NCBI GenBank assembly: GCA_002269645.1
Contig: NIVC01001272.1
Location: 186,001 to 250,000, forward strand
DNA: 64,000 bases
DNA from: Macrostomum lignano
Taxonomy: Eukaryota
Direction: 5' to 3'
The position numbers and the translations under genes are program-made. Below, piece after piece: positions 4,301-50,744 of this stretch (positions are counted from its first letter, which is position 1; the number at the start of each line of letters is the position of its first letter). Below the pieces are notes generated by a model. It searched no databases, was not told the DNA's origin, and was given only the letters and a program-made list of their open reading frames with translations.

Positions 4301-7300
4301 CACAAATTGTTCCAGTGGGATCGGGAATCGAACCCCCGACCTTTAAGTTGTGAGTCCGACGCTCTAACCGCTAGGCTACAACCCCTCCTCTCTTTGATGC
4401 TCTCCTGCCTTTGATACTTCCCTGTCTCTGACGCTTCCATATATTTGATGCTTCCCTGTCTCTGACGCTTCCATGTATTTGATGCTTCCCTGTCTCTGAC
4501 GCTTCCATGTATTTGATGCTTCCCTGTCTTTGATGCTTCCCCATCTTTATTGCTTCCCCATCTTTGATGCTTCCCTATCTTTGATGCTTCCCTATCTTTG
4601 ATGCTTCCCTATCTTTGATGCTTCCCTATCTTTGATGCTTCCCTATCTTTGATGCTTCCCTATCTTTGATGCTTCCCTATCTTTGATGCTTCCCTATCTT
4701 TGATGCTTCCCTATCTTTGATGCTTCCCTATCTTTGATGCTTCCCTATCTTTGATGCTTCCCTATCTTTGATGCTTCCCTATCTTTGATGCTTCCCTATC
4801 TTTGATGCTTCCCTATCTTTGATGCTTCCCTATCTTTGATGCTTCCCTATCTTTGATGCTTCCCTATCTTTGATGCTTCCCTATCTTTGATGCTTCCCTA
4901 TCTTTGATGCTTCCCTATCTTTGATGCTTCCCTATCTTTGATGCTTCCATCTTTGATACTCCCCTATCTTCCGCCTCTCTGATTGTTGTTTTTCTCCAAT
5001 GCAGCAGTCAGCAGCCTACCACCTAAAACCGCACCAATCCCCCATCTCAACCCCTCGCAGATCCGAGAAACCACCCACGCTGATCTGAAGCTGCGCCTCT
5101 GCCGTCTGCTGGCCCACCTGTTCCGCTTGGCGGCCCCTCTGCTCGCCTCCGCTACCCCAGCTTCAGCGACTCCATCATCAAAGCTGCAGCATCCTTCGGC
5201 ATCGTGCGAGACCTGGCCTCTGGGAGAGTCAGCCACCCAGCTCACTGAGATGCTGCGAGAGCAGTTTCGCAACACTAAACTCAAACAGGCGTTGCTGGCC
5301 GCTCTGGGGGAACTGCTGGTTGCCATCTCAGCTGGAGAGTCCGCTCTGGGCAAGCAAGTGGCTAAATGGATTGTGCCTGCTATGACAGTCAATCAGGTGT
5401 CCCGGTGCTTGCATAGCAGCGAAGAGGTCGTTACTAGTCACCTGGCTTGCAAGATTATTGAGAAGGTAAGCAGCTTCTGTGCTAGATATGAAGCTCCCCC
5501 TCCCCCTACTATTATGAAGCTTCCGCCCCTTACTGCCCCCACTAGCATGAAGCTTCCGCGTACATGCGCAACCTTGGGAATCACTCGGCCGTTTCTATTG
5601 GCAACATACATATAAGTCGCTATTGGCTGAGAGCAGTCACGTGACTACTATTCCGTCCAATAGCGACTTACATGTGTGTGTTGCCAATAGAAACGGCCGG
5701 GTGAATTCCTACGCTACGCATTCCTACTCGTAGATTGCGTCCAAGCATGATCTTCCGCCCCTTACCGCCCCCACTAGCATGAAGCTTCCGCTCCTTACCG
5801 CCCCCACTAGTATGAATCTAGTATGAATCTAGTATGAAGCTTCCGCCCCTACTCTCATGAAGCTTCCGCCCCTACTCTCATGAAGCTTCCGCCCCTACTC
5901 TCATGAAGCTTCCGCCCCTACTCTCATGAAGCTTCCGCCCCTACTCTCATGAAGCTTCCGCCCCTACTCTCATGAAGCTTCCGCCCCTACTCTCATGAAG
6001 CTTCCGCCCCTACTCTCATGAAGCTTCCGCCCCTACTCTCATGAAGCTTCCGCCCCTACTCTCATGAAGCTTCCGCCCCTACTCTCATGAAGCTTCCGCC
6101 CCTACTCTCATGAAGCTTCCGCCCCTACTCTCATGAAGCTTCCGCCCCTACTCTCATGAAGCTTCCGCCCCTACTCTCATGAAGCTTCCGCCCCTACTCT
6201 CATGAAGCTTCCGCCCCTACTCTCATGAAGCTTCCGCCCCTACTCTCATGAAGCTTCCGCCCCTACTCTCATGAAGCTTCCGCCCCTACTCTCATGAAGC
6301 TTCCGCCCCTACTCTCATGAAGCTTCCGCCCCTACTCTCATGAAGCTTCCGCCCCTACTCTCATGAAGCTTCCGCCCCTACTCTCATGAAGCTTCCGCCC
6401 CTACTCTCATGAAGCTTCCGCCCCTACTCTCATGAAGCTTCCGCCCCTACTCTCATGAAGCTTCCGCCCCTACTCTCATGAAGCTTCCGCCCCTACTCTC
6501 ATGAAGCTTCCGCCCCTACTCTCATGAAGCTTCCGCCCCTACTCTCATGAAGCTTCCGCCCCTACTCTCATGAAGCTTCCGCCCCTACTCTCATGAAGCT
6601 TCCGCCCCTACTCTCATGAAGCTCCCGCCCGTATACTGTTTAAATTCCACCTCCCGTCATTACAGCCGCTTCCTCTACACAGATGCATAACCAAATCAGC
6701 CAACCGCCCCTCCTTCCCCCCACCTGGCAGGTATGCGGCTACCAGGACACTCAGCACGCCGCCCGTTTCAGCACCCAGGAGCTGGGCCAGCTGGTCTGGT
6801 CCACCCTTCGCCTGGCTACCCTGGACAGCCTGCGAATCTGTGCAGCTGTCAGTCTCAGCCGCATGTGCCGCATCAGTCCCGCTATCTGTCAATCAGTAGT
6901 TGATAAAGCTGGACTATCCAGCGTGCTGGACTGCTTGAATGCACCGTCCAGTCTAACCAGAGTGCAACAGTCGGTGCTGAGCATGCTGGGTGCCAGTCTG
7001 ATCTGCAGTCCTACCGCTCCATTCAGCAAGAAGCTGTCTCAGGACCGAGACTTCCTACACTCGGTGCTCAAACAGCTGGAGAGTCCGAATCCATTAAACC
7101 GAGCCAAAGCGTTTCTAATAGTCGATTCGGTAGTTCGAAATTCGCCAGATTCGTTGAATGTCTGCTGCAATCTCCGGCTGTTGGTGTATGTTGAACGGGA
7201 CTCGAGGCGGGACACGCCAGGGGCTGGTCGAGGCGCAGCAGGGGTGGAGCTGCAGGCGCACCTGTACCACTGCCTGGACCTGCTGGTTGGCACCCTGTGC

Positions 7301-10300
7301 GCCTGCGTGCCGGGCGTGACCGATCAAATTCTTGCTGCGTTGGACGCTGTAGCTGGTAGGAAGCATCCATCTAATGCTCAGGTAAATTTGACAATTATTG
7401 TCTACCCGATATGTATCGAAAGTTGTTTGTTAAATAATCAATTGTTTTAAGTTGTTTTTGCTCTGGGTAACCCAGCCACGATCCGTACCCATTCAGTGAG
7501 GGTTGTAGCCTTGTGGTTAGAGTGTCGGACTCATGATTGAAAGGTCGGGGGTTCGATTCCCGATCCCACTCGGAACAATTTGTGTCCTTGAGCAAGGCGC
7601 TTAACTCTGCATTGCTTCAGTCCACCCAGCTGTAAAATGGGTGCCAGCATTAGCTGGGATAATTGAGGGTGTGTGGCAACCCCCCAGTCCTTGGACTAAA
7701 CAGCCGTACGCAGCCTTCAGATGCGCCGCGCAATAGCTCCATATCTGTGTACAGTAGTTGCTTATCCCGATATGTATCGAAATGCAGAAATACGTACATT
7801 AAAAAAACTCTACATTATTTGAAAGTATTCCACAGTGGCTTATTATACTACTGATATGAATGGAACATATTAGAGATTCCAAATTCAAAATTGAATGCTT
7901 CACCCGTTTTCGCTCTAGCTTAGCTAGCACTACCGATATGTATCGAAATTTAAAAATTAATGTTACTCAGATTTAAACTCGTTTAGTCGTTAACTCGTTT
8001 CCTCAACACATATCTAGGATATGTTGCCTAAGATTAGCTGAACTACCGATATGTATCGAAATGTATATATTTTCTAAATTTATATCTAGGATATGCTGCC
8101 TAACTAAGATTAGCTAGGCTACCGATATGTATCGAAATAACCTTTTCTAACGATTCTGAAAAATTATGCAGGCAAAACAGCTGCGCCAGTGGTTACCCCT
8201 GACGTCGGTGCTGGCCCAGCTATCGGGGTCTCCGGCTCTGCGGTCCCGCATCGTTCAGGCTCCGTTTCTGTCATTTCTTGGCCAGCTGCTCAGCCACTGT
8301 CAGGCACTGGACTGTCACAAGACTGTTGTTGAACCGGCTGTGAGCCACGAAGAAGTCATCACTACCGCTTTGACTATCGCAGAATCTTTGGTGCTGCATC
8401 CCAACTTGCTGGTTGGCTGCGGCGAATTGGTTGCTAAGCAACTGTTGCCACCGCTGGGCGGTCTCATTGGCAGCAGTGTTGTTGAGACTAGGGTGAGCTT
8501 CTTCTGCTGCTACCTCATTGAAGCTTCCGCCCCTCCCATCAAGCTTCCGCCCCCTCCCATCAAGCTTCCGCCCCCTCCCATCAAGCTTTCGCCCCCTCCC
8601 ATCAAGCTTCCGCCCCCTCCCATCAAGCTTCCGCCCCCTCCCCATGAAGCTTCCGCCCCTTCCTATGAAGCTTCCGCCCCCTTCCTATGAAGCTTCCGCC
8701 CCCTTCCTATGAAGCTTCCGCCCCCTTCCTATGAAGCATCCGCCCCTTTCCATAAAGCTTCATCCCCCTTGCTATGAAGCTTCATCCCCTCATAAAGCTT
8801 CCGCCCCCTCTCATGAAGCTTCCGCCCCCTTCCTATGAAGCTTTCGCCCCCTCCCCATGAAGCTTCCGCCCCCTTCCTATGAAGCTTCCGCCCCCTTCCT
8901 ATGAAGCTTCCGCCCCCTTCCTATGAAGCTTCCGCCCCCTTCCTATGAAGCTTCCGCCCCCTCCCCATGAAGCTTCCGCCCCCTTCCTATGAAGCTTCCG
9001 CCCCCTTCCTATGAAGCTTCCGCCCCCTTCCTATGAAGCTTCCGCCCCCTTCCTATGAAGCCTCCGCCCCTTCCTATGAAGCTTCCGCCCCTTTCCATAA
9101 AGCTTCATCCCCCTTGCTATGAAGCTTCATCCCCTCATAAAGCTTCCGCCCCCTCTCATGAAGCTTCCGCCCCATCCCCATTAAACTTTCCGCCTCCTTC
9201 CTCTAAAGCTTCATCCCCTCATGAAGCTTCCGCCCTCTCCTTATGAATCTTCCGCCCCCTCATGAAGCTTCCGCTGTCTTCCTCATGAAGCTTCCGCCCC
9301 CTCCTCATGAAGCTTCCGCCCCCTCATGAAGCTTCCACCCTCTTCCTTATAAAGCTTCCACCCTCTTTCTTATAAAGCTTCCACCCCTTTAAAAAACGCC
9401 TGTCATAAATAGTAACAATGTCACTTATAAAGTAGAATTTGTACTTTCATATTTTATAATTGCCAGATTTCTGTGTCACATCCACACACCCTGCTGTTCC
9501 ACTTCCCCAGGTGGTCGCCATGAAAATATTCGCCGAAATGTGCTGCCACCTGCTCGCCCAAGATATCGAATCGGAATCGGTCGCAGCTGCGATAGACGAC
9601 TTGATCATTCCTCAGTCCGAGTCCCTTCTGCTCGAGGCCGAGCCGGCTCCCTGCTTTCTATTAAAGCTACTCGGCAGCTATTGCGAGGCAAAACCGTCAG
9701 CGGCCGCCATTGTTCAGCTTGCAGGTCTGCCCCAGTTGCTGTTGCAGCTGCTGGCTGATAGACAGTTTGGCTTCACGTCTCAAACCGCTTTGAATTCGTT
9801 TCGACTTATCACGGTTGGTTTATTGATTGATTATCTGGTTGCTATGGTGTAGCTAACTGGTTGCTATGGTGTAGCTAACTGGTTGCTATGGTGTAGCTAA
9901 CTGGTTGCTATGGTGTAGCTAACTGGTTGCTATGGTGTAGCTAACTGGTTGCTATGGTGTAGCTAACTGGTTGCTATGGTGTAGCTAACTGGCTGCTATG
10001 GTGTAGCTAACTGGTTTCTTTGGTGTAGCTAACTGTTTTCTATGGTGTAGCTAACTGGTTGCTGTGGTGTAGCTAACTGGTTGCTATGGTGTAGCTAACT
10101 GGTTGCTATGGTGTAGCTAACTGGTTGCTATGGTGTAGCTAACTGGTTGCTATGGCGTAGCTAACTGGCTGCTATGCTGTTGCTGGACTGCTCTTATATT
10201 TCAGCTTTGAACTTGATAAAAAATGCTAAAATTCTACTGAAAGTAGCTCCAAATGTACATTGTTTGCGCATAAACATCCAACCAGATTCTACTCAGCCAA

Positions 10301-21667: not shown

Positions 21668-24443
21668 TATCACTCTCCTTATGTCCCTTATGTTTTAAAT
21701 ATATTAAATCATTCATCCCTAACTTACGCCAATCTTCTCAGACTGGAACCGTTGCTCAAAAAGCAAGAAGACAGAATGGATCAGCTGCTGAATGCGCAGG
21801 CTGAATGGACTCATGCTCAGGTAGGATATGAGTTTGTATTATTGCTTATACGTGTTTTCGTATATTTATGCGCATCTGTCTGTTTCTTTGTCTCCCTGGG
21901 GTAAGTCTAGGGCGAATCTTGTGACTTTAAACAACTCCAACGACTGTGATGCGACGGAGCGGTGCGACATCTTGTCGTTTTAGAGTTGTCTCGAGTTAGT
22001 TTACCCGACTCTTGGGCGATGCAAGTGAATCTAGGACGCTTCTTGGGTCTGTGTTGTCTGATCTGTCTTGTCGTGTCTGTCAGAGTAACATACTTGCCAC
22101 CCCCTGTCAAATCCACAGGCGTCTCTAGCCGCAGTCCTGGCTAAGGTGAACAACCGCTTGGACTTAATCAACTCCGAGGTAGCCAATCGCACCGATCTGA
22201 TTCACTCGTCTCGCGAACAGTTCGCAGCAATGAAGTCGGCCCTAACCGTCTCAGCCGCCAGCGCTACAGACGCGGCTCTGCTTGGTCGCACAATAAAGAA
22301 TGTCAACTGTTTGGCGCTGAAATTCAATGCTGACGATGACCAGCAGAGCTCGTCAGCTGCTGCGAGTAACAGCAGTTTTAGTAATCGGCCAGAATTGGAA
22401 GGCACCTCAGCCGAAGTTGATGAGCTGATAACTAGATTGTCAGTCTGTGTTGATGTTAATAATGTTTCTGATACCATGGTGGTTTCCATGGCAACGCCGG
22501 AGAAACCGAAGCAGCAGCCGCAGCAACAGCCGCAGCCGCAACAGCAGCAGATCCCATCTACGCCTAGCATTCTAGGGCCGGGCCCGCCAACTAAAGCAAT
22601 TTTATCTAAATATTATTCAAATTTTCCGCAACAATTTACCTACTATTTCACTGTAGTTGGGTCTATTGTTAGCTTGACCGTGTGCTCCAACACGGAGGGT
22701 TACCTGTACGGTAGAGGCATGGTCCTCTCGGCTCGTACTGTGGCGGCTGCTGGCGAACAGGCATCCTTCAAGGCACTACCGGATGAGGTTATTCTAATCT
22801 TGGAGGGAGTGTCGCCGCATACTAAGGTTGGTTGCTAAGGTCTTGTTTATTTAGGCTTGCGATAAGGGAAAAGGGCACTGGGATAAGGGAGGGTGACACT
22901 GGGATAGGGAAGAGTGACACTGGGATAAAGGAGAGTGGCACTGGGATAAGGGAGGGTGACACTGGGATAGGGAAGAGTGACACTGGGATAAAGGAAAGTG
23001 GCACTGGGATAGGGGAGAGTGGCACTGGGATAAAGGAAAGTGGCACTGGGATAAGGGAGAGCGGCACTGGGATAAGGGAGAGTGGCACTGGGATAGGGGA
23101 GAGTGGCACTGGGATAAAGGAAAGTGGCACTGGGATAAGGGAGAGTGGCACTGGGATAAGGGAGAGTGGCACTGGGATAGGGGAGAGTGGCACTGGGATA
23201 GGGGAGAGTGGCACTGGGATAGGGGAGAGTGGCACTGGGATAGGGGAGAGTGGCACTGGGATAGGGGAGAGTGGCACTGGGATAGGGGAGAGTGGCACTG
23301 GGATAGGGGAGAGTGGCACTGGGATAGGGGAGAGTGGTACTGGGATAGGGGAGAGTGGTACTGGGATAGAGGAGAGTGGTACTGGGATAGGGGAGAGTGG
23401 CACTGGGATAGGGGAGAGTGGCACTGGGATAGGGGAGAGTGGTACTGGGATAGGGGAGAGTGGTACTGGGATAGGGGAGAGTGGTACTGGGATAGGGGAG
23501 AGTGGCACTGGGATAGGGGAGAGTGGCACTGGGATAGGGGAGAGTGGTACTGGGATAGGGGAGAGTGGTACTGGGATAGGGGAGAGTGGCACTGGGATAG
23601 AGGAGATTGGCACTGGGATAAAGGATAGTGGCACTGGGATAAGGGAAAGTGGCACTGGGATAAGGGATAGTGGCACTGGGATAAGGGAAAGTGGCACTGA
23701 CACTGAACAACAACCCACTCCCCCAGCTGAAGGCATACGGTGTAGACGGCAGTTACAAAGGCAACATCGACATGAAGATGCCAGACGGCTCCGGCCCCAG
23801 CGTGTCCCCCAACTACAACATAGCAGCCAACGATGTCACCCAACTGCTTGCCATCAGCCTGTCAAAAATCAATCAGGTACTCGTGACAACACTTGACGGC
23901 AGTCATAAACTACTGGTGACAAATTGCTGCGGCTTAGACTTGGACAATCCTCTGGGCACCTTCCTCACCGACAATAACCGGGTGTACATTGCCGATTTTC
24001 GCAACCGGCGGGTGTGCAGCGTGTGCTGCGACACTGGACAAGGTGTCCGGGTGTTCAAGCACAACTCGCTGGCTAGAGTTGATCGAATTGCAGTCGCTAA
24101 AGATGGCACAGTCTTGGCCAGAGTTGAGCCCTGTCACCTGGTGATTTTGAAAGAGCAGCCTGAGCAGTTGCCAGCCAGGCTGCCTGAGATCAAGCGGAAG
24201 TTTTTTCATTTTCAATTGGACCCGTTCGGCGATCTGGTGTTTACTAGCGGCGGCGGGTTGCAGACTGGTCAGCTGTATGTGCTCCGACAGCCGTGTGTTG
24301 TACCGGATTCTGGTGGGTCTAGCAATCCACCTGAATTCAAGCTGATCCAGTGGTCTGATGTCAAATACAGCTGCGTGCTCAGGCTGAAGAATGGTCAGAT
24401 ACTGGCCTCCGCTGCCAATAAGAAGGAGATTCATTTCTTTTGA
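19886..24443 (+). CDS. TRIM-like protein: RING, B-box-like Cys/His motif, coiled coil, low-complexity linker and NHL/beta-propeller-like C-terminus, about 624 aa, 4 exons
   Basis: C3HC4 RING (CIIC..PCGHSFC..C..CPNC) and CDKC..CRHC..LCGPC..H. Exons 19886-20256, 21742-21820, 22119-22826, 23727-24443 are in frame (1875 nt). NNRVYIADFRNRRV is NHL-repeat-like. Confidence 0.8.
20265..21665. repeat. ~51-55-bp minisatellite (TCTATCCCTCTTGGCCAGCC..CCCTCACCCCAATGTACACAC) ending in (CA)n, TRIM intron 1
   Basis: Direct reading; explains many overlapping ORFs between 20130 and 21904. Confidence 0.95.
22865..23700. repeat. 21-bp G-rich minisatellite (GGGATAGGGGAGAGTGGCACT) in TRIM intron 3
   Basis: 7-aa periodic ORFs in several frames (GIGESGT, PLSPIPV). 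Confidence 0.95.
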
Positions 24444-24537
24444 ACTTACCGGCTTTTTGTTGTTTTTTTACCAACTTTTATCGTAGCTTTATTTACTGCG
24501 TGTCATGTTTCTCTAGATACTCGAGACTGATGGCAGA

Positions 24538-24790
24538 GTAGCCTCCCAGATCCCTGTTGGTTAGTAGACACCCTCCCAGATCCTCAGATTTCGGCAAGCA
24601 GCCTCCCAGATCCTGGCTTGCTGGGCCAGCCTCCCAGATCCTCAGTTGCTGGGCCAGCCTCCCAGATCCCCAGCTGTTGAGCCAGCCTCCCTGATCCTCA
24701 GTTGCTGGGCCAGCCTCTCTGATCCTCAGTTGCTGGGCCAGCCTCCCAGATCCCCAGCTGTTGAGTCAGCCTCCCAGATCCTCAGTTGCT
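24538..24790. repeat. 28-bp tandem repeat (GCCTCCCAGATCCTCAGTTGCTGGGCCA) 3' of the TRIM gene
   Basis: GCCTCC at 24601, 24629 and 24657. Confidence 0.9.
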
Positions 24791-25858
24791 TAATCACTGC
24801 CATCATCAAAACAGATTTTTACCTATCGCATATGACTTTTTAACGTTGTATTATTACTATCAATTATCATCGGGTAATTCTGCCACTTGATTCTGCTATT
24901 TTTTACGTTATTTCCGTGCGATCCTTTGTTTGAACCGCATATGTTTTTTTTCAAAGATAGTTTTTGTTTATATATATATTTTTATTTACAATGTTCTAAC
25001 TGCTTATTCAGACAAATGTAACCAGGTGATGCTCCGTGCGAATTAGAGTTAACATAATAATCTGTCATGATGATTGCCTCGCGTCTGTCAGTCATTGACT
25101 CACTAAATGAATTTTCTATATTTTTGTTAGAATTTTACTAACTCGCCAATTTCTCTGTTTTGTAGATTTTTTCAAACCTGTCAGGCCAGCCTTAATAATA
25201 ACCCAAAAAGTGAAAAAAGTCGAAAAATCACCCAAAAAGTTATCTTGTTCCAGACTGTTCTACTGAAATAAAAGCTTGCAAAAGTTTCTATAAAAACAAC
25301 AATAAACCAAAAAAATTATGTTTTAATCAACTTGTTTTGACTTGGTTTCTTTTCTAGGACATTAGCAACTTGTTCAGAACGTTAGTATTACAAAAAAATG
25401 TTAGATTCATTGAAAACAACTCATTCGGTGACTCTTGAGACGTTTTAACGACTCAAAGGACTTTTGAGTCAGGAGCGCATCACGTGAGTTGCAGATTCGT
25501 AAATGAGTCGCAAAAAAGTCGTCTAAGAGTCGTCTTGTTAGCGCTTAATTTTCTACTAACTCAAGTAGACTAAATAGAGTTTTATAAATGCGAAATGCAA
25601 TTTTAAATAATTTATAAACTGACGCAGATGGCAGATGCTCCTTAGATGCAACTCAGTGATTTAACTGCGACTCTGGCATGGCATGGCATGGCATGGCATG
25701 ACGATAAAACGTCTCAAAATTACTACTAGGCGACTGACGTCTTTTTTGACGACTTATACCGCGAAATTTAGTCGTTTTAGACTCGTCTGAAGTCACTTCT
25801 TTTCTATTTTACTTGTGTCTACAGCAAACCCATATTAAACAACTCTGATTCCCATTTT

Positions 25859-28800
25859 CTGGCTCTGTTCCCAGCTTCCAATGATGCTGAGCTTGCTAAA
25901 TCCATAGCCGAACTGACTGCAAGTGTCAGCTCAGCTGCGACTGTTTATGACAGCTATCGGCCGGGTGACAATGCCGCTGCCGCAACTACCGCATCATCGG
26001 AGTTTCTGCCTCATTCCTCTTCAACAACTGCTGACAAAAAGCTAAAGAGAAAATACAAGAAAGACAAGAAAACTTCGAAAAAGAAGCCTAAGAGTGCAAA
26101 ACGAGAGCCAGATGACTCGGACAGCGAGTCCGTTACTGTCAGTGAGGTGCCAGAAAGCTTTGACATTGACCGAACTGGCAATGACAATATTAGAATTTAT
26201 GGCTGCCTCGCCAAGCTGCATCAACCGCAACTTCCTGGCGGGCATTGGCGGCGTCAGTTTGCCTTGAAATTTGACGGCTCTTGTCAGAAATTGCCGCAGC
26301 AACAATCCGAAGATCAGAAGGAAAAATCCGCATCCAGCAAAGACGTCATCAAAGCTTGGAGAAAGCGGCGCTACTTTGCTAAACGGCATAGAAAACTTCT
26401 ACCTTTGACTGAGACTTCTGTCCCGGACTCTGCCAATGCTCTTCCGCAGCTTGATGTCGCTGATTCATCGCAGAATTCCTCAGAAGAAACTCCTGACAGT
26501 CTGCTTCAATTAGCTGCTAAACAAGGTCGATTATTTCCGAATAATTCTCGGTTAGCAACTGAGCGGTGTCTGGCTATAGTTAAGCGAGGTCTGGAATTGT
26601 CGCCAGCTCATTTAGGCCTTCGAATGCTCGAAGCTCGAGTCGCTCTGCCGAGCTGGGATCGAGCTGAGGCTCTGCGCCGTCTATCAGATTTGACATTCAA
26701 ATATCCGAATTCCACAGTAGCTTGGCTGTGTCGGTTGCAGTTGTTGCGGTCCAGTTTAGAATTGTACAATCGTTCTCAGCAGTTGAGACTCTATGCAGAG
26801 GCATTCGCCACACTGACAGCTATTGCTGATGGCCGCATGCTGTCGCACAGAGCTTTGCCTGACTGTTGGGAGCATCTGCTAGTTCTGTTTCTTGATTACT
26901 GCCTGTATCTGGAGCGTTGCGGTCTCATTGAACGAGCGATTGCCTCGTTTCAAGCCATTATCGAGTTTAACTTGTGCCGACCAACATCTGCAGCGACTGC
27001 AGACGAATTTGAAGCATTCTGGAGCTCTGGGGCGCCTCGGTTCGGCGACGTGTCCAGTCGCGGTTGGAGAGGCGACTGTGCCAGCAGTGCAACAGTTGAT
27101 GCGGCTGATAGTGATGAGGGGTGAGGAAGAGGTTCTTCGATATCTGGGCTGCTAGATCCTTCGAGTGATTTTACTAGCAGATCATTTCACAGTACTGATA
27201 GCCGAAGCTAGCCAAGCTAGTTTATGGTCCTTAGTGGGCAGATGTGCAACCGACAGTTCAGCCGCAGCTATTGCGCGATGCATTTGAAGACTGTGTACAG
27301 CTGTTCAGTCCAAGGCCTTGGGTGGGGGAGTCGCCATACACCCTTAAGTACCCCAGCTGATGCTTGTAGACCTTTACAGCTGAGTGAACTGAGGCAATAC
27401 AGAGTTAATCAAGTGTCCTGCTTAGGAACACAAATTGTGTCGAATCGAACCCCTGAATTCAGTCGTAAGTCCGACGCTCTAACCACTAGGCTACAATCCC
27501 TACAATTGCTACAATCGCGATATCGCATGTTAACCTGGCATGGCTCTGTGTGAGCAGGACAGCCACACGTTAGCGACAAGCACAAATGACCTTAATTGAA
27601 CTCTCATTTCAGCTACTTCCTAGCTGCTCAAGAGTCATGCGACGATGAAGAAAGGAAACTGCTTCAGAATCATCTGGAAAACATTCAGTGCCAGGATGAA
27701 GAAGACAAAAACCAGCCGCCACTTGCCGAGCTGATGCTCGAATTCGAACGGATTCGCTGTCACTGGCTCTGGTATCCGTGCCGCAGGGAAAACGAGATTG
27801 AAGATCTCGACAGACTTGTAGCCTTTGACGATGTTCGAGCTTGTCTCATTCGACTGCCAACTGAACTGACGCCTCATCTTGTGGCGCTGTTTCTCCTGTT
27901 CTTGAGATGTCCTCAGCTAGAGCTGGACCAAGATTGCTGCAGTCTGTTGCATCGGCTGCAGACTGCTGTGGGGGATCAGCAACTGCTGGCTTCCGTGCTG
28001 ATGGGTGCTAGGTTTGTCTCCTTGATGTGTATTGCTCTCGCTTTGAGACTCATCACCCCAGCCTCAGCTAATCTACCAGACACTCACCCTGGCTCATTTA
28101 TCACCCCAACTCATCTACCAGACACTCACCCAGCTCATCTACCAGACACTCACCCCAGCTCATCCACCAGACACCCGCATCTCCCCTCAGATCCCGGATC
28201 CATTTCGGCGCCAACAGCGCCACCAGCGGCAGAGGCGAGCTTGGCGGATTTTATCGCACCGAACCGGCGCCAAATTGGCGCGACCTTCAAATGTTCCGAC
28301 TGCGTCTGTGCTGCCAAACCGCTACGGGTGGCAATTATTTCTCCGACTGTCTGAGCAGCCACAGCAGAGAAATGTTTGCTCGATTGGCTGTAGCGGAGGC
28401 TGCCTCAATCGATCAGCAGTTGCTGAGGCGAGTAGCCAAATCCCTGCTGCGAAGTCGACCGGACTGGAGCGTCTGGGCCGCGTTCGCTGCCGCTGACGCG
28501 AATTCGAATAGCAGTCGACGGACTTTTGATGGCGTGCTTGAGGGGCTGAAGTTTCCCGGCCTGTGCAGTGGGCTGGTGAGGAGTTTTTTACGGAACTGCT
28601 TAGCAACTGAGCTTAGCATAGTAACACCCCAGCAACCAATATGTTCATATCGACACCCTAGCAACCAGTGAATCGGCATAGCAACACATGAATTTGCATA
28701 GCGACACCCTAGCAACCCGTGAATTAGCATAACAACACCCTTAAAAATCACTCCCCATTTGCATAACGACACCCTAGCAACAGCTGTGTAAATAGCGTTA

Positions 28801-29430
28801 CCCTAGAAACTACTGTATCGGCATAGCAACGCCTTAGCAACCATTTCCAACTACTTATGGAACAAAAACCCACCAAATCCATCGCTCACAGGCCACTCCA
28901 GAACAATGCCAACAGGCCCTGTCAATCATTCTGGCAGCCGTCTGCTCCGAGCTGTCAATCAATCTGAGCTCACCGCCAGCCGGTGCAAAAACTGCCGACA
29001 GACTTCGGCGCTGTCTAAATCTGTCCGCTGCCGACAGGGACGCCTCGGATTCGGTGACTCGGGTTGCCAAGCTGCTCGCTCTGGCCGCTGGGTCCGCTGG
29101 CGTTGAATCGATCCAATACCAACTGGAGGTCGCGAGTTCGAGTCTGACCTCGGCTGGGCACCTGCTGATTCTGCATCTGGGCTTGATGAAGCCGCACTCT
29201 CTGCTGCTGGCCGGCGCTCCTAAGAAACTGATGGAGCGAGCCAAGAGAGCTGCCGAGGTGAGATGCGGCTGCATATTATCGCTTGACTACTTATGATGAT
29301 CAGTAGTATATGACGGGTCAGTGCTGTAATGACTATTGCTACCTACTACTACTGCTGCTACTACTACTACTATTACTACTACTACTGCTGCTACTACTAC
29401 TACTATTACTACTACTACTGCTGCTACTAC

Positions 29431-29478
<48 letters not shown>

Positions 29479-30424
29479 TACCCCGAAGGTCGAGGGTTCG
29501 AGTCCGGACTCGGCCGCCGCCATCTGTCTGCACCTGTTGGCGCAGCTTCGCCTCGCTCGCCACGGCAGCCTGGCCGAGCTGGGCGACCTCGCCGCCGACA
29601 CCCTGGAAGGCAGCCGGTGCAGCGGCCTCGGCGCCACTCACCGACTGTGCCGCCTGCTGATGACCTGCCTGGCCAACCCGCTCAGCCTCGGCCGGCTCCG
29701 CGCCCGCCTCGATCGACTGCCGCCGCAGCCAACGACGCTCGCCGTGTCGGCCGCCGTCGAAGTCGCCCGGCTGTCGAGTCTGGGCTGGCCGTCGGCTCGG
29801 AGCGACGCCTGCTGGACTCGCCTGGGCCGCCTGCTTGACCGAGCCGCCGCTGCCGCCGTCGAAGTTGGCGACGAGGTTGCCATGGCAACCATTTGGCGTC
29901 AGCGGTTGAGAATAAGTTTGCGCGACTGCTCAACCAGCGAGCTGATTGACATTTGGTCTCGAGGCCTGCAGGCCTGTCCGCACTGCAAGCTGCTCTGTCT
30001 GGACGGCCTGGCGATCGCCTTGAGGGCCGGCCGCGACTCTCCGGAAACCGGACAGCACCGGACACTTCTGGACAAGGTGTCCGACATCATGGTCGAGAAG
30101 GATGTCCGACAGCGAGTCCTGCCTGACGAGATTCTCATGCTGTGGGAGGCCGCAGCGGAAACCGCATCCGCCCACGCACCCGGTCCTGCATCCGCCCACG
30201 CATCCGGTGCCGCATCCGCCCACGCATCCGGTGCTGCATCCGCCCACGCATCCGGTGCCGCATCCGCCCACGCATCCGGTGCTGCATCCTCCCATGCATC
30301 CGGTGCCGCTGAGAATGCAGAAGCCATCCCAGTGGATCGTCAGAGTATCCGGTTCAGCATCCATCCGCCCCCATCAAGAGTTTGCCCTTCTCAAATGGCC
30401 AATTTCGAATCAATTTTTGATTAA
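25859..30424 (+). CDS. NRDE2: NRDE2 (nuclear RNAi/exosome regulator, HAT-repeat protein), about 1115 aa, 5 exons; start codon is CTG rather than ATG
   Basis: N-terminal ALFPA, LSH.ALP..E.L..LFL, FEAFWSSGAPRFGD...RGW, RRVAKSLL, C-terminal GLQACPHCK.L.LD..EKDVR.RVLPDEI. Exons 25859-27120, 27613-28011, 28191-28575, 28892-29257, 29489-30424 are in frame (3348 nt). Confidence 0.9.
27227..27501 (-). mobile_element. tRNA-derived SINE, copy C (NRDE2 intron 1)
   Basis: CAGATGTGCAACCGACAG..TTTACAGCTGAGTGAACTGAGGCAAT..TCCGACGCTCTAACC..AGGCTACAA matches the other copies. Confidence 0.82.
28060..28175. repeat. ~24-bp repeat (CACCCAGCTCATCTACCAGACACT) in NRDE2 intron 2
   Basis: About 4 imperfect copies. 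Confidence 0.8.
28615..28845. repeat. Degenerate GCATAGCGACACCCTAGCAAC repeats in NRDE2 intron 3
   Basis: Recurring CACCCTAGCAAC and GCATAGCAAC motifs. Confidence 0.7.
29335..29481. repeat. (TAC)n/(TGC) microsatellite in NRDE2 intron 4
   Basis: Direct reading; explains the poly-T, poly-L, poly-V and poly-S ORFs. Confidence 0.95.
30164..30306 (+). repeat. 24-bp in-frame coding repeat (ASAHASGA)n in the NRDE2 C-terminal extension
   Basis: GCATCCGCCCACGCATCCGGTGCY, about 6 copies. Confidence 0.85.
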
Positions 30425-30654
30425 ACTTGAATTGCCTTGAAGTTTGATAAATACGAGCTAATAGTGCATTTTCGGTAATCATTTATTAACATTGTGCATT
30501 TTATTCACGGCTAAATACATGCACATAAGCCTTATATAATTACTTCGAATAATTTCTTTGAATTTCTTGTTTTTTTTTACGAATTCGTTATCTATCAGAT
30601 AGGAGAGGCGGTATGGGGAGAGAGAGGGATAGTGTGAGGAGAGGGGGAGGCGGT

Positions 30655-34284: not shown

Positions 34285-36332
34285 TTAATGCAATGATTGT
34301 TTGCGGTCTCTCACTCTTGGGTATTTTATATGCGTTGTTGCAAAGCTATTGCAATGACCATTCTGACTCACCGACCCCTGCATCAGCTGCTCGACCTTCT
34401 CTCTCGTGCCCTGGTGGTCACAAATGGCTCGCCTGTGTCTCTGAACCAGTTGGACAAGCAGGTCGCAGTCCTCGCAAAGCTCAAGAGTTACAAGCAGCTC
34501 CTGAACGTCTGGACTCGCACAGCGGAGAGTTTCTTCAAACCACAGTTCAAGTTCCACATCGTGATCTAGGTAGAGTCTGAGAGCTTTCAGCAGCGCATCA
34601 AAGTTCACGTAGTACCAGTCGAACTGGCCACAGCTCAATGAGAAATGCTGCCTGAATTTGGCTGGCAGAAATGACAGAACGGGCGGCTTGTCGGCTTGAA
34701 TCAGGAGCTTCCAAACCGAACTGGATCTTTCCAGGTGCTGCCACACCGCCAACTCAGACTCTGCGTCAGTGGCGCGCACCTTCCAGCGTGACAGTCCTCG
34801 GCTGACCTGATGATAGCGGAACGAGCGCAAGACCCTTCGCGCCGCGTAGCGCATTTCGAATTTCAAGTAGATCAGCGCGAAGAGGCAGTACTTCGGACAT
34901 GCAGCGTAGTTGGGAACTCTGCGAGCCAGTTTCATCATGACCTTTTTGTCTTCTTCGCGGCACTCTTCATGAGCCAAGTTCAGCAGAACGGACCGGATCG
35001 CGTCATACACATCGTGGAACTGCAGGTTTGATGCCATCGGAACTGGCCTCGGGATCAAAACTGGCAGCACCAGGAACGGATGAAAGCTAAAGTTTTTCGC
35101 ATCCTCCAGTGGTCGCAGCGTTTCGTAAAAACACGACACAACTTCTGACAGCTTTTCGATGATGTCCTTCACAACATCTGAAATCAGCTTCTTTCCACTG
35201 TGGCGCTTCTTTAAATACACCCAGGCATCTCTCATGAAGAAGTGCTTCATGCACTTGTCCGCATCTGAAATATCCTTGTCCAGCAGACACCGCAACAGAA
35301 TCGAAAGTGCTCGTTTCGCCAGACTGATTAGGTTTTCGGACTGCCAGTGAGTAGCAGGCGTCTCATCCAGCAGGTAAAACATCAGACTCTTGGCTATGTA
35401 GGTCTTGAGTCCATTGGCTCGGGCTGAAATCACTTTCTTAATGATGAACTTGATAAGCACGAACACGTGTCCCTGCTCAGTTGTCAGGCTTCTGAGCAGC
35501 CTTCGTTCCAGGAAGGTGGTGCTGATCCTCAGCTGCTGCCCGTCCTTGCTGGGGGGAGCCGCTGCCACCAGGTGACATGGAGACTCCAGCATCTCCTGCC
35601 TCAGGCTCTGCAGCACTGATGGCGCAATGTGAGTACTGTATCCTGGCTGCAGCACTTCCAGTTTTGGATAGCAACAGCAGCGGAACGCCCACACAAGATC
35701 GACTGCCGGTCTGACCTCCGACCCGGCCCAGGTCTGCGACGGATTCGACGCTGTTTGGCGCGAAATTGTTAGTGGGTGAGCTTTTAGGAAAATGATCTTT
35801 TTAGCAAAATGCTGCGTTTGGTAAAATGATACAAAGGAGGGTGCACAAGTGAAAATGAAAATCACAGGTTCCAGCCAATATCCTCTTACGCGATCCAGGC
35901 CACTTAATGTGCCCGTCCTCATATTCAACTACCCTGTGTCGTTCTTCATCGAAGCTGCAGTTGATGCAGCTGCAGCTGCCTTTGAGATGAAAGAGCATCC
36001 CTTTCGCAACGAAGCAGACGTCGATGTCGGAGTCTGCGTCCGTTTGGCCATCCAACCGAACCAGACTGTTGGACCAGCCTTCACTGTAGCTCCCGACGAT
36101 GTACACTTCGTAGTCATTGTACTCCTGAGCGTCCAGGCGGTTTCTGATGATGCGCTGCAGGACATCAGAACATGCGGATTGCAGTTTCACACGATTCAGC
36201 TCAAATCCGGACTCCTTCAGGGCTCTGTGCAGCTGAGCACTTTTGTGGTTCTCTGTCAAACTTTCTGGTTCATCTTCCACAGCCTCCATATCGATGAGGA
36301 CCTCGCGCAGGCTGTTTGAGTCGGGCTGCTCA
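34285..36332 (-). CDS. Mab-21/cGAS-like nucleotidyltransferase (cGLR1) exons; predicted 3' part of the ANK-cGLR1 fusion gene
   Basis: GSYSEGW..DSDIDV, third acid in RPAVDLV, helical lobe GLKTYIAKSLMFYLL..W..L..MKHFFM. A 139-bp phase-1 intron (35889..35751, GTAAGA..CACTAAC..CAG) joins ORFs 35801..36289 and 34285..35928. Confidence 0.88.
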
Positions 36333-37985: not shown

Positions 37986-38873
37986 TTACCGCTCTTCGGG
38001 CAAAGACGTGCTGCGAGACTGAGCTGCAGGAACAAGCGAATTCTTGAATCGCTGCAGCCTCTCGTTGGTCTTCTCGTGCCGGATTCCGAGCTCCCTGGCG
38101 TGAGTCGCATGCTTGAGAAGCAGCTGCAAGACCTCGCAATGCCCGAAATGACAGGCGATGGCAGCGGCGCTAAGCCCGCACCTGTTGAGATCGCCGAGCC
38201 CGCAGCCGAGCTGCAGCAGAGTCTGGGCGGCGGCCTCGTGCCCCATCGCTGCCGCAGCGTGCAGCGGCGTCGACCCGTCGCTGGCCAGCGAGTCGGCGGC
38301 GACTCCCGCCCGGACGAGCAGCTCAATGGCGACCCGCTGGCCGTGGAGAGCCGCGGAGTGCAGCGGGGTCTGGCCGCGCGCATTCCTGGCGCTCGGATCC
38401 GCGCCTGCCAGCAGCAGAGCAGCGAGCACGAGCTGCTGCCTGAGCTGAGCAGCCAGGTGCACCGGCGAGTCTCCGTCTGCGAGCTGCTGGTCGCAGTCGG
38501 CCTGCCGGCTCAGCAGCTGCACGACTTCGAGGTGGCCGTTCCGCGAGGCGAGGTGCAGCGCCGAGGAGCTGGACTTCGTCACCAGGCTGGTGTCGGCCTC
38601 GGACTCGAGCAGCAGCCGGACCGCATCCCGGTGACCGTGCATCGAGGCCAGGTGCAGAGCGGTCGCCCCGCTGCTGTCCTGAGCGTCCAGCTGAGCTCCG
38701 GCCTCGATGAGAAGCCTCGCCACCCTGGACTGGCCTCGCTCGGCTGCCCAGTGCAGCGCCGTCCGCTGCCGGTCGTCAGCGACGTCCGGACTGACGCTGC
38801 TCCGTAGAAACTGCCGCACCTTGCCGACTCTGCCGTCCATGGCGGCGCTCTTCAGCTCCGGGAGCAGGTTCAT
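37986..38873 (-). CDS. Ankyrin-repeat exon (about 8 repeats); predicted first coding exon of ANK-cGLR1
   Basis: TALH/TPLH repeats. The apparent stop lies inside a consensus donor GAGCG|GTAAGC (phase 2, GT at 37989). Confidence 0.9.
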   Translation of the reverse strand: MNLLPELKSAAMDGRVGKVRQFLRSSVSPDVADDRQRTALHWAAERGQSRVARLLIEAGAQLDAQDSSGATALHLASMHGHRDAVRLLLESEADTSLVTKSSSSALHLASRNGHLEVVQLLSRQADCDQQLADGDSPVHLAAQLRQQLVLAALLLAGADPSARNARGQTPLHSAALHGQRVAIELLVRAGVAADSLASDGSTPLHAAAAMGHEAAAQTLLQLGCGLGDLNRCGLSAAAIACHFGHCEVLQLLLKHATHARELGIRHEKTNERLQRFKNSLVPAAQSRSTSLPEER

Positions 38874-41796: not shown

Positions 41797-42066
41797 GGGC
41801 CAGATGTGCAACCGACAGCTCAGCCGCAGCTATTGTGTGGCGCATCTGAAGGCTGCGTACGGTTGTTCAGTCCAAGGGCTGGGGGTCGCCACACAACCTC
41901 AATTATCGCAGTTAATGCTGGCTCCCATTTTACAGCTGGTTGAACTGAAGCAATACAGAGTTAAGTGTCTTGCTCTCAAGGACACAAGTGTTTAAGTTGA
42001 CCAAGAATCAAACCCCCGACCTTCAAGTCGTGATTCCGACGCTCTGTTCACTATAGGCTACAACCT
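41797..42066 (-). mobile_element. tRNA-derived SINE, copy D
   Basis: Close match to copy A over about 270 bp. Confidence 0.85.
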
Positions 42067-42121
42067 ACGTACAACCCCAATATTTACCAAGAACAGAAAA
42101 AGCACAGCTACTTGCTTCATT

Positions 42122-49631: not shown

Positions 49632-50744
49632 ATGTACCTTCTAGATGAAGCACTCATCAGCGCACCAGACGAAATGAGCGAACAGATCAGTGCTGATGAG
49701 GCCGCCAAGACAGGAAATATTCAGGCACTCCAACATCATCTGGACCTTCAGCAAGAAGAAAACAAAAGATATCTTTTTTGCAAAACCGTTTCAAAACTTG
49801 CTGCGAGTGAGGGTCAGTTAGAAGTCGTCAGGTTTCTCGTGCAGGAAATCGCTGACCAAGCAAAAAGAGATGACTGCTACATCAAGGCTGCAGAATCCGC
49901 TGCAAGAAATGATCAGTGGGATATCGTCAAGTTTCTCGTGCATTTAGTCGCTGACCAAAAAAGAAGAGATCAGTGCTGCACTGACGCTGCCAACACTGCT
50001 GCATACAATCGTCAGTGGGAGTTTGTCAAGCTTTTCGTGTCGAAAATCGCTGACCAAACGAAAAGAGATGATTGCTGCATCGAGGCTGCCAAATCTGCTG
50101 CAAAATATGGTCAAATAGAAGTCGTCAAGTTATTCCTCTCCTATCTCCCAAGTCCGGATCAGAGAGCGAATCTCCGTTTCCAATGCGCAGTCGCGGCTTG
50201 CTCTCGTCTTCACAAAGATGTCGTTGCCTCCCTCGGCCTCGAGCCCGACTGGCTCTTCCAATCCAGCTCCATCCTCAGCTTCACTGCAGCAATGGCCATC
50301 GAAGGCAGGAACTCTGTTCTCAACGACATCCTCTCTCGAATGCAGCCAGCTCACATCACACAGCTGCTCCGTCTCTCTATCACTCAAAGACACGTCGCTC
50401 TTGCTGTCACACTGATCAATGATGAGCGAGTCAGCACAGAGCATGTCGATCTGGCAGACAGCACTGGAGCCACTGCTCTCATGCTGGCAGCTGATGCAGG
50501 TCATCACGAGCTCATTGAGAAACTCATCGATCTCGGTGCGTCAGTGCGTGCTGAAGACAGTCAGGGTCGGACTGCTCTGTCACGAGCGTGCGAAGCCGGT
50601 CACGTGCGAGCAGCCAAGGCTCTGATGGACAGAGGAGCGGATGCGAGTCATCGAGACGGTCGGGGTCAGACGTGTGCGCAGGTGGCACAGCGATTTGAGC
50701 AGCGGCAGGTGCTGCGGCTGCTGGATCCCAGTGGAGCGGGGTGA
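49632..50744 (+). CDS. Ankyrin-repeat exon (atypical N-terminal 33-aa repeats plus canonical C-terminal repeats); predicted first coding exon of ANK-cGLR2
   Basis: GATALMLAADAGH, GRTALSRACEAGH. The apparent stop lies inside donor GCGGG|GTGAGT (phase 2, GT at 50741). The start may instead be ATG 49674. Confidence 0.88.
   Translation: MYLLDEALISAPDEMSEQISADEAAKTGNIQALQHHLDLQQEENKRYLFCKTVSKLAASEGQLEVVRFLVQEIADQAKRDDCYIKAAESAARNDQWDIVKFLVHLVADQKRRDQCCTDAANTAAYNRQWEFVKLFVSKIADQTKRDDCCIEAAKSAAKYGQIEVVKLFLSYLPSPDQRANLRFQCAVAACSRLHKDVVASLGLEPDWLFQSSSILSFTAAMAIEGRNSVLNDILSRMQPAHITQLLRLSITQRHVALAVTLINDERVSTEHVDLADSTGATALMLAADAGHHELIEKLIDLGASVRAEDSQGRTALSRACEAGHVRAAKALMDRGADASHRDGRGQTCAQVAQRFEQRQVLRLLDPSGAG

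What the first reader, a model, noticed from the sequence alone, without database searches (positions are those of the whole stretch)
25778..25910. NRDE2 lacks an ATG: the conserved (M)ALFPA N-terminus starts with CTG
Seen: CTG GCT CTG TTC CCA GCT at 25859 opens the NRDE2 frame. An in-frame TAG lies upstream at 25778 with no ATG in between, and the next in-frame ATG is hundreds of bases into conserved sequence. An out-of-frame ATG ATG mini-ORF (25881-25907) follows immediately. Known: human NRDE2 begins MALFPAF, and flatworm spliced leaders end in AUG, which can serve as the initiator. The context TTTTCTG|GCT is one base from a TTTTCAG acceptor that would give SL-AUG + ALFPA exactly. Options: CUG initiation throttled by a decoy uORF, an SL-donated AUG at a non-canonical acceptor, a pseudogenising allele, or an assembly error. 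An upstream phase-1 exon using the acceptor at 25874 is also possible.
Basis: partly seen in the sequence, partly recalled or inferred. Interest (0 to 1): 0.7.

Follow-up and report, generated by a model that had tools for sequence, protein, structure and literature searches.

The report
NRDE2 gene without an ATG start
An otherwise intact animal NRDE2 gene has CTG where its start codon should be; this is most likely a one-base variant or base-call error in this assembled copy, not a new way of starting translation, and only reads or cDNA can settle it.

Summary
In the NRDE2 frame a TAG lies at 25778-80. No ATG follows until 26624 (residue 256). CTG GCT CTG TTC CCA GCT at 25859 encodes L-ALFPA. 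ATGATG at 25881 opens an out-of-frame 8-codon ORF.

ALFPA is a real family motif: human NRDE2 starts MALFPAF, and 58 of 103 long homologues carry xLFP near the N-terminus. Base composition and codon usage switch from non-coding to coding exactly at 25859. The gene matches the family profile along its whole length, so it is not decayed. A well-formed acceptor (Py tract + CTACAG, 25824) lies 34 nt upstream, but a leader-donated AUG there is out of frame (MQTHIKQL*).

The assembled CTG is one substitution from ATG and one from a TTTTCAG acceptor. My best reading (about 0.45) is a one-base departure at the initiator position in this copy: an allele, a paralogue or a base-call error. Rivals are an upstream ATG exon, true CUG initiation, and a leader AUG donated at the in-frame TTTTAG acceptor (25780).

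The source organism is absent from every library, so no reads, cDNAs or sister copies could be checked. Interest is low to moderate.

The parts
25430..25800 (.). Array of about 12 short motifs built on CGACT/AGTCG in both orientations. It may be a promoter or outron element, or a degenerate foldback repeat, directly upstream of the gene.
   Evidence: There are 8 core hits between 25449 and 25770, the densest 400 nt in the window. The region forms a web of short inverted repeats. No other copy is in the window.
25484..25489 (+). GTGAGT, the only GTRAGT donor-like site in the 1.4-kb intergenic region. It could pair with the acceptor at 25824 to make a 341-nt 5'UTR intron.
   Evidence: An exon ending at 25483 carries no ATG that stays open into the NRDE2 frame: the ATG 25398 ORF stops at 25446-48.
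25778..25780 (+). In-frame TAG that closes the NRDE2 frame upstream. Its AG is also a weak, in-frame acceptor candidate (cgttttAG|ACT, exon start 25781).
   Evidence: It has a poor Py tract, another AG 9 nt upstream (25770-71), and lies inside the motif array.
25793..25824 (+). Polypyrimidine tract plus CTACAG, a well-formed 3' splice acceptor (cis or spliced-leader). The exon would start at 25825.
   Evidence: It is 12/16 pyrimidines with a 31-nt AG-free zone. It is one of only 5 YTNCAG sites of this quality on the + strand of 64 kb. It matches the M. lignano SL-acceptor motif [T/C]TNCAG (PMC8629364).
25825..25858 (+). 34-nt leader. A leader-donated AUG joined at 25825 would read MQTHIKQL and stop at TGA 25846-48, out of frame with NRDE2.
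   Evidence: GC is 0.32 and codon usage is non-coding-like.
25859..25861 (+). CTG at the position where the family has its initiator Met. It is one substitution from ATG (C25859 to A) and one from a CAG acceptor (T25860 to A).
   Evidence: The context is -3 U, +4 G.
25862..25876 (+). ALFPA, the conserved NRDE2 N-terminal motif.
25865..25867 (+). Second in-frame CTG (-3 G, +4 U). Initiation here would give M-FPA, an N-terminus that some homologues have.
   Evidence: MFPA/MFPS forms in 9 homologues.
25881..25907 (+). Out-of-frame ATGATG mini-ORF (MMLSLLNP*). Most likely just coding sequence (S-N-D-A-E-L-A-K-S-I) read in frame +1.
25859..27120 (+). NRDE2 exon 1: 420 codons plus 2 bases, open throughout.
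   Evidence: Pfam NRDE-2 1.8e-27. Family HMM positions 61-504 map here. The donor is GG|GTGAGG at 27121.
26624..26626 (+). First in-frame ATG (residue 256), inside the NRDE-2 domain.
   Evidence: The Pfam domain spans residues 225-409.
27121..27612 (+). Intron 1 (GTGAGG...CATTTCAG, phase 2). It contains a tRNA-like interspersed repeat.
27613..30424 (+). Remaining NRDE2 exons and introns, up to the TAA at 30422-24.
   Evidence: Family HMM positions 510-625, 689-773 and 893-1090 map collinearly to 27671-30148. tblastn with human and other homologues agrees.

Best explanation
The natural initiation site of this NRDE2 gene is at 25859-25861, directly in front of ALFPA.

The 5' end is laid out in an ordinary way. 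An upstream region is followed by a canonical 3' splice acceptor at 25824. That acceptor could be used in cis from the GTGAGT donor at 25484, or in trans by a spliced leader. A 34-nt non-coding leader follows, then the initiator position, then M-ALFPA.

In this assembled copy the initiator position reads CTG, a single-base departure from the functional state. The most likely change is ATG to CTG. Less likely, a TTTTCAG trans-splice acceptor that let a leader AUG supply the Met became TTTTCTG. The change is either a real variant of one allele or paralogous copy, or a base-call error.

Taken as assembled, this copy would make little full-length protein. Scanning ribosomes would start only inefficiently at CUG 25859 or 25865, and most would be captured by the out-of-frame AUGs at 25881/25884 and the seven that follow.

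Shown: the sequence facts, the motif conservation, the coding boundary and the intactness of the gene. Inferred: the direction of the change, the use of the 25824 acceptor, and the consequences for translation.
For: 1. The coding signal begins exactly at 25859.
   - GC is 0.35 in 25781-25858 (the intergenic level is 0.36) and 0.51 from 25859 on.
   - The codon-usage log-likelihood ratio of the 26 upstream in-frame codons is -8.8, below all 263 coding windows (mean +7.0). The first 26 codons from 25859 score +6.2.
2. [AS]LFP[AS] is the family's N-terminal motif. In 18 of 58 motif-bearing full-length homologues it sits directly at the Met (MALFPA, MSLFPA, MFPA), including human NRDE2.
3. A well-formed acceptor 34 nt upstream gives a short leader. 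Only 5 sites of that quality exist on the + strand of 64 kb, so the chance of one within 40 nt is about 0.3%.
4. The frame of a leader-donated AUG at that acceptor is closed by TGA before 25859. That is what one expects if the gene has its own start just downstream.
5. The only GTRAGT in the intergenic region lies 341 nt upstream of that acceptor.
6. The gene is otherwise intact and matches the family profile from position 61 to 1090 of 1092. Any lesion is therefore recent, or is an error.
7. Redundant copies that tolerate a start loss would then be expected.
8. No convincing upstream ATG exon exists.
Against: - No read, cDNA, second copy or orthologue could be examined, so the claim that an ATG (or CAG) exists elsewhere is untested.
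- The ORF shows no second lesion, which also fits a functional gene that initiates unconventionally.
- The 11 nt before CTG are 10/11 pyrimidines (TTCCCATTTTC). They resemble the gene's own intron-1 acceptor CATTTCAG more than a Kozak context. This favours the rarer 'mutated acceptor' sub-version, or a real unconventional mechanism.
- About two thirds of motif-bearing homologues have a 3-40 residue extension before xLFP, so a Met further upstream fits the family.
- The organism, and hence its ploidy and trans-splicing, is unidentified.
Confidence: 0.45

Rival explanations
1. An undetected upstream exon carries the ATG and is cis-spliced in frame to 25825 (phase 2) or 25781 (phase 0). CTG would then be an ordinary internal Leu codon, and the protein would have a short extension before ALFPA.
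For: - About 35-40 of 58 motif-bearing homologues have 3-40 residues before xLFP.
- 25824 is a strong acceptor.
- The frame is open from 25781.
Against: - Every ATG-to-GT combination in 24300-25860 was enumerated, and none combines an open frame, the right phase and a GTRAG donor. The best are cattcg|GTGACT and gcgtct|GTCAGT.
- The one good donor (GTGAGT, 25484) is preceded by a stop in the relevant frame.
- The would-be coding extension has non-coding composition: log-likelihood ratio -5.9 for 11 codons and -8.8 for 26.
- The upstream gene ends at 24443, which leaves little room.
Confidence: 0.15
2. The sequence is correct and NRDE2 is translated from a near-cognate CUG (25859, or 25865 giving M-FPA). 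Initiator tRNA decodes it as Met. Output is kept low by the upstream leader ORF and the out-of-frame AUGs just downstream.
For: - CUG is the most efficient near-cognate start codon (established knowledge of non-AUG initiation).
- It sits exactly at the Met position of the family motif.
- There is +4 G at 25859 and -3 G at 25865.
- The ORF is intact over more than 1000 codons.
Against: - -3 is U at 25859, while 4 of 5 credible start codons in the window have a -3 purine (read directly).
- No stable downstream structure is seen (z -0.26 to -0.86).
- Nine out-of-frame AUGs follow, which would capture scanning ribosomes.
- Genes that rely only on a non-AUG start are rare (own knowledge).
- Conservation of the CUG could not be tested.
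Confidence: 0.12
3. The Met is donated by a spliced leader ending in AUG. The leader is trans-spliced at the canonical in-frame acceptor formed by the 'stop' itself (cgttttAG|ACT, exon start 25781; or gaAG|TCA at 25793). The result is M-TRLKSLLFYFTCVYSKPILNNSDSHF-LALFPA...
For: - Both AGs are in frame with no intervening stop.
- All reported flatworm spliced leaders end in AUG. In S. mansoni more than 40 cDNAs need that AUG to start translation (PMC12582326; PMC9851317).
- The M. lignano leader ends ...TTGCATG, and trans-splicing there is enriched among conserved genes (PMC8629364).
Against: - Both acceptors are weak. The first has a poor Py tract and an AG 9 nt upstream; the second is an AAG.
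- Both lie inside a repeated-motif array.
- A much stronger, out-of-frame acceptor lies between them and the ORF.
- The 26-codon extension is non-coding in composition.
- An open stretch of this length is expected by chance 24% of the time.
- The organism's spliced leader is not established here.
Confidence: 0.1
4. A spliced leader is joined at the non-canonical TTTTCTG|GCT site (a TG 3' splice site), giving SL-AUG + ALFPA exactly.
For: - The junction would reproduce MALFPA exactly.
- The preceding 11 nt are 10/11 pyrimidines, and the site is one base from YTNCAG.
Against: - 3' splice sites are almost invariably AG. The known TG sites are rare alternatives lying next to an AG (own knowledge).
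- Canonical AGs flank this site at 25824 and 25874.
- Nothing in the window supports use of the site.
Confidence: 0.02

Closest known systems
Human NRDE2 (NP_060440.2 / Q9H7Z3) and the NRDE-2 family (Pfam PF08424)
   Same: - The NRDE-2 domain is present.
- The gene is collinear over the whole family profile.
- The N-terminal ALFPA motif is identical to human residues 2-6.
   Different: - The codon before ALFPA is CTG, not ATG.
- Identity in the domain is only 33-39% to any library protein.
- The second N-terminal motif (DWLxNxSF) is at best degenerate here (SEFLPHSS; my reading of the translation).
Spliced-leader-donated initiator AUG in flatworms (Cheng et al. 2006, as cited in PMC9851317, PMC12582326 and PMC5832876)
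   Same: - The conserved ORF has no AUG of its own.
- Acceptor-like sequence lies immediately upstream.
- The exact Met position coincides with a would-be splice junction.
   Different: - The dinucleotide at that junction is TG, not AG.
- The only canonical in-frame acceptors are weak and 66-78 nt upstream.
- The best acceptor is out of frame.
- The organism and its spliced leader are not established here.
Main ORFs that initiate at near-cognate codons (for example EIF4G2/DAP5 at GUG, or the CUG-initiated MYC and FGF2 isoforms; own knowledge)
   Same: An in-frame CUG sits at the 5' edge of conserved coding sequence, with no in-frame AUG between it and the upstream stop.
   Different: - The Kozak context is weak (-3 U).
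- No downstream hairpin is detectable.
- No conservation evidence is available.
- Strong competing out-of-frame AUGs begin 22 nt downstream.
Start-codon-loss alleles in redundant gene copies of recently duplicated genomes
   Same: There is a single substitution at the initiator position in an otherwise intact ORF. If the source is M. lignano, most genes are duplicated in the assembly.
   Different: No second copy with ATG could be shown, and no further decay is visible.

Membership tests
NRDE2 protein family | NRDE-2 domain (PF08424) above the gathering score | tested here: met
   Exon 1 scores 96.7 bits (cut-off 34), E 1.8e-27. Exon 2 continues profile positions 241-322.
NRDE2 protein family | Full-length collinearity, including the C-terminal region | tested here: met
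   An HMM built from 60 full-length homologues maps positions 61-216, 313-504, 510-625, 689-773 and 893-1090 in order across 26012-30148. tblastn agrees.
NRDE2 protein family | N-terminal xLFP[AS] motif | tested here: met
   ALFPA at 25862-76. The motif is present in 58 of 103 long homologues, and human NRDE2 starts MALFPAF.
SL-donated initiator AUG (flatworm type) | The organism has a spliced leader ending in AUG | not testable with these tools
   No SL RNA gene is in the window and Rfam finds nothing. The organism is not identifiable because no close protein relatives exist in the libraries.
SL-donated initiator AUG (flatworm type) | A canonical AG acceptor in frame with the ORF, with no stop between | tested here: inconclusive
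AGs at 25780 and 25792 are in frame but weak, and the strong acceptor at 25824 is out of frame.
SL-donated initiator AUG (flatworm type) | SL-containing cDNA or reads at the junction | not testable with these tools
   No transcript or read data for this organism is in any accessible collection.
Non-AUG (CUG) initiated main ORF | A near-cognate codon in frame at the 5' edge of conserved sequence, with no in-frame AUG after the upstream stop | tested here: met
Non-AUG (CUG) initiated main ORF | A favourable context (-3 purine and +4 G), a downstream structure, or both | tested here: not met
   At 25859 the context is -3 U, +4 G. Folding z-scores are -0.26 to -0.86.
Non-AUG (CUG) initiated main ORF | Conservation of the near-cognate codon in relatives; an initiation peak in ribosome profiling | not testable with these tools
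   No relatives closer than 39% identity and no profiling data are available.
Start-loss allele or decaying copy | Other copies or reads carry ATG | not testable with these tools
   No second copy is in the window or in the libraries.
Start-loss allele or decaying copy | Additional disabling lesions | tested here: not met
   No in-frame stop occurs in the homologous segments, and the profile is collinear over its full length. Intron 1 has canonical GT-AG in the correct phase. If this is a loss, it is recent.

The most novel reading that the evidence does not exclude
The sequence is correct in all copies, and this animal's NRDE2 (a conserved nuclear-exosome/RNA-surveillance regulator) is translated only from a near-cognate CUG at the ancestral Met position. 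That CUG lies downstream of a leader whose own AUG opens a terminating mini-ORF, and just upstream of out-of-frame AUGs. Initiation would then be obligatorily non-AUG and tightly throttled.
Probability: 0.12. Interest if true: 0.55.

Novelty: new member of a known kind. Interest (0 to 1): 0.27.

Why it matters
If the CTG is a variant or an error, the finding matters mainly for annotation. Gene callers will truncate this NRDE2 to the Met at residue 256 or mark it partial, so the copy should be flagged.

If the CTG is fixed and the gene is functional, it would be a clean invertebrate case of obligatory non-AUG initiation. If a leader AUG is involved, it would be a case of leader-dependent initiation in a conserved RNA-surveillance gene. 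Either would be useful for studying how start-site choice sets the dose of such a factor.

Both outcomes are kinds of thing already known, so the value is that of an example, not of a principle.

Tried and rejected
- **Close relatives, other copies or transcripts of this organism.**
  - The word-indexed protein search gave no hit.
  - The exhaustive HMMER search gave 479 NRDE2 homologues, but none above 39% identity.
  - The FAM91 gene of the window likewise finds nothing above 53%.
  - Exact-product look-ups for two window ORFs were not on record.
  - An exact 31-mer search of the metagenome contigs found nothing.
- **Published tables.** A search for NRDE2 in M. lignano supplements found nothing, or the files were not held. 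The promoter sequences in the Wudarski 2017 supplement are truncated and were not compared with the window.
- **SL RNA gene, other RNA families and tRNAs in the window.** None was found.
- **Upstream ATG exon.** Exhaustive enumeration gave no convincing candidate.
- **Hairpin downstream of the CUG.** Not significant.
- **Polishing artefact.** I considered whether polishing with SL-bearing RNA-seq reads could have imprinted the leader tail (..GCATG) onto the genome and turned CAG into CTG.
  - No SL-tail imprint was seen at ORF starts in the window.
  - For a gene of presumably modest expression, such reads would be outnumbered by DNA reads (reasoning only).
  - I rejected this as a main explanation.
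- **General enrichment of strong acceptors just upstream of credible start codons in the window**, looked for as indirect proof of trans-splicing. Only NRDE2 has one under strict criteria, so I make no such claim.
- **Phase-1 exon joining at 25874.** Rejected because it would delete the conserved ALFPA.
Full report
**Observation.**
- In the NRDE2 frame the window reads TAG (25778-80), then 26 open codons, then CTG GCT CTG TTC CCA GCT (25859-76 = L-ALFPA).
- The first in-frame ATG is at 26624, residue 256. Nine ATGs precede it, all in frame +1. The first two (25881, 25884) open MMLSLLNP*, ending at 25907.
- Exon 1 (25859-27120) scores 1.8e-27 against Pfam NRDE-2, and exon 2 continues the domain.

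**Is ALFPA real?**
- An exhaustive HMMER search found 479 NRDE2 homologues, none closer than 39% identity.
- Among 103 long ones that begin with M, 58 carry an xLFP[AS] motif in the first 90 residues.
- In 18 of these it sits directly at the Met (MALFPA, MSLFPA, MFPA). In the rest a 3-40 residue extension precedes it.
- Human NRDE2 (NP_060440.2) begins MALFPAF.
- The motif is therefore homologous and exonic.
- The family is compatible both with a Met right at 25859 and with a Met further upstream.

**Where does coding start?**
- GC is 0.35 in 25781-25858, like the intergenic region (0.36), and 0.51 from 25859 on.
- I trained a codon-usage log-likelihood ratio on about 3600 codons of Pfam-supported ORFs in the window, against non-coding trinucleotides.
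- It gives -8.8 for the 26 upstream in-frame codons. That is below all 263 coding windows (mean +7.0, 5th percentile -1.4) and typical of non-coding sequence.
- It gives +6.2 for the first 26 codons from 25859.
- The upstream openness is not significant: 24% of non-coding 26-codon windows are stop-free.
- The coding signal therefore begins at the CTG.

**Splice signals around the start.**
- The best acceptor is cacttcttttctattttacttgtgtctaCAG| at 25824. It has 12/16 pyrimidines and a 31-nt AG-free zone. It matches the [T/C]TNCAG motif reported for M. lignano spliced-leader acceptors (PMC8629364).
- Only five sites of this quality exist on the + strand of the window.
- An exon starting at 25825 puts a leader-donated AUG out of frame (MQTHIKQL, with TGA at 25846-48).
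- The AG of the TAG 'stop' (exon start 25781) and the AG at 25792 are in frame. Both are weak: a poor Py tract, an AG 9 nt upstream, or AAG. Both lie inside an array of CGACT/AGTCG motifs.
- The AG at 25874 is in the mini-ORF frame.
- The only GTRAGT donor in the intergenic 1.4 kb (GTGAGT, 25484) could pair with 25824 as a 341-nt 5'UTR intron. No ATG stays open across it.
- Enumerating all ATG-to-GT combinations for all four acceptors gave no convincing ATG-bearing upstream exon.

**State of the gene.**
- A profile built from 60 full-length homologues maps collinearly from position 61 to 1090 of 1092 across 26012-30148.
- tblastn with human and other NRDE2 proteins agrees.
- Intron 1 (27121-27612) has GTGAGG...CATTTCAG in the right phase.
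- The gene is not a decayed pseudogene.

**The CUG as a start.**
- The context is -3 U, +4 G. A second in-frame CUG at 25865 has -3 G, +4 U and would give M-FPA, an N-terminus seen in nine homologues.
- No downstream structure stands out (z -0.26 to -0.86).
- Four of five credible start codons in the window have a -3 purine.
- CUG initiation is possible but not favoured by context, and ribosomes that pass it meet AUGs in the wrong frame 22 nt later.

**Interpretation.**
- Several features describe an ordinary gene start at 25859 whose initiator is altered by one base in this copy:
  - the compositional boundary;
  - the family motif;
  - the canonical acceptor 34 nt upstream;
  - the closed leader-AUG frame;
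  - the intact ORF.
- I weighed the readings with rough priors from my own knowledge and from the cited papers: how often first-hit start-loss variants occur in redundant copies, how rare obligatory non-AUG starts are, and how often leader-dependent starts occur. I combined these with how well each reading fits the local signals.

| Reading | Weight |
|---|---|
| One-base departure, total | about 0.45 |
| - of which ATG to CTG | about 0.3 |
| - of which CAG to CTG | about 0.1 |
| - of which base-call error | about 0.05 |
| Undetected upstream ATG exon | 0.15 |
| Genuine CUG initiation | 0.12 |
| Leader AUG at the in-frame TTTTAG acceptor | 0.10 |
| TG acceptor | 0.02 |

- These numbers are judgement, not measurement.

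**Limits.**
- The organism could not be identified. No protein of the window has a close relative in any library, and no exact products are on record.
- The window holds no SL RNA gene and no Rfam or tRNA hit.
They draw on M. lignano and S. mansoni literature.
- One feature fits trans-splicing but does not prove it. The next gene (RRM protein, ATG 30613) begins 174 nt after the NRDE2 stop, behind a Py tract + CAG at 30596-98.

**Verdict.** The anomaly is real and accurately described, and its most probable causes are mundane. Reads and cDNA at this one codon would settle the question.

Noticed in passing
window 25430-25800: Dense array of about 12 short motifs built on CGACT/AGTCG (GAGTCGTC-like) in both orientations, forming many short inverted repeats. 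With 8 core hits it is the densest 400 nt in the window. It lies immediately upstream of the NRDE2 acceptor and could be a promoter element or a degenerate foldback repeat.
   Followed up: partly
window 27227-27501, 4107-4386, 7500-7738 (inverted), 41798-42068: A roughly 280-bp interspersed repeat with tRNA-like A and B boxes (SINE-like). There are four copies at 74-77% identity, one of them inside NRDE2 intron 1. ARAGORN and Rfam do not call it.
   Followed up: partly
window 24537-24794: A 28-nt tandem repeat (about 9 copies, CAGCCTCCCAGATCC...) just after the stop (24441-43) of the upstream + strand gene.
   Followed up: no
window 25675-25699: (GGCAT)5 microsatellite within the upstream region of NRDE2.
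   Followed up: no
window 30422-30615: The next gene (RGG-rich RRM protein, ATG 30613) starts 174 nt after the NRDE2 stop, behind a T-rich tract and CAG at 30596-98. The spacing is operon-like.
   Followed up: partly
window 25859-26626: All nine out-of-frame ATGs between the CTG and the first in-frame ATG are in frame +1 and none is in frame +2. There are also no Met codons in the first 255 residues.
   Followed up: no
window 29340-29480 and 30160-30300: A long trinucleotide (ACT/ACC-type) repeat and a repeated SAHASGAA-type coding repeat lie inside or at the 3' end of the NRDE2 locus. The ORF runs about 90 codons past the point where human NRDE2 ends.
   Followed up: no
window 34285-35928 (-) and 54854-56323 (+): Two ORFs carry weak Mab-21 (cGAS-like) domain hits. 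Two ankyrin-repeat genes (37986-38873 on the - strand, 49632-50744 on the + strand) lie nearby.
   Followed up: no
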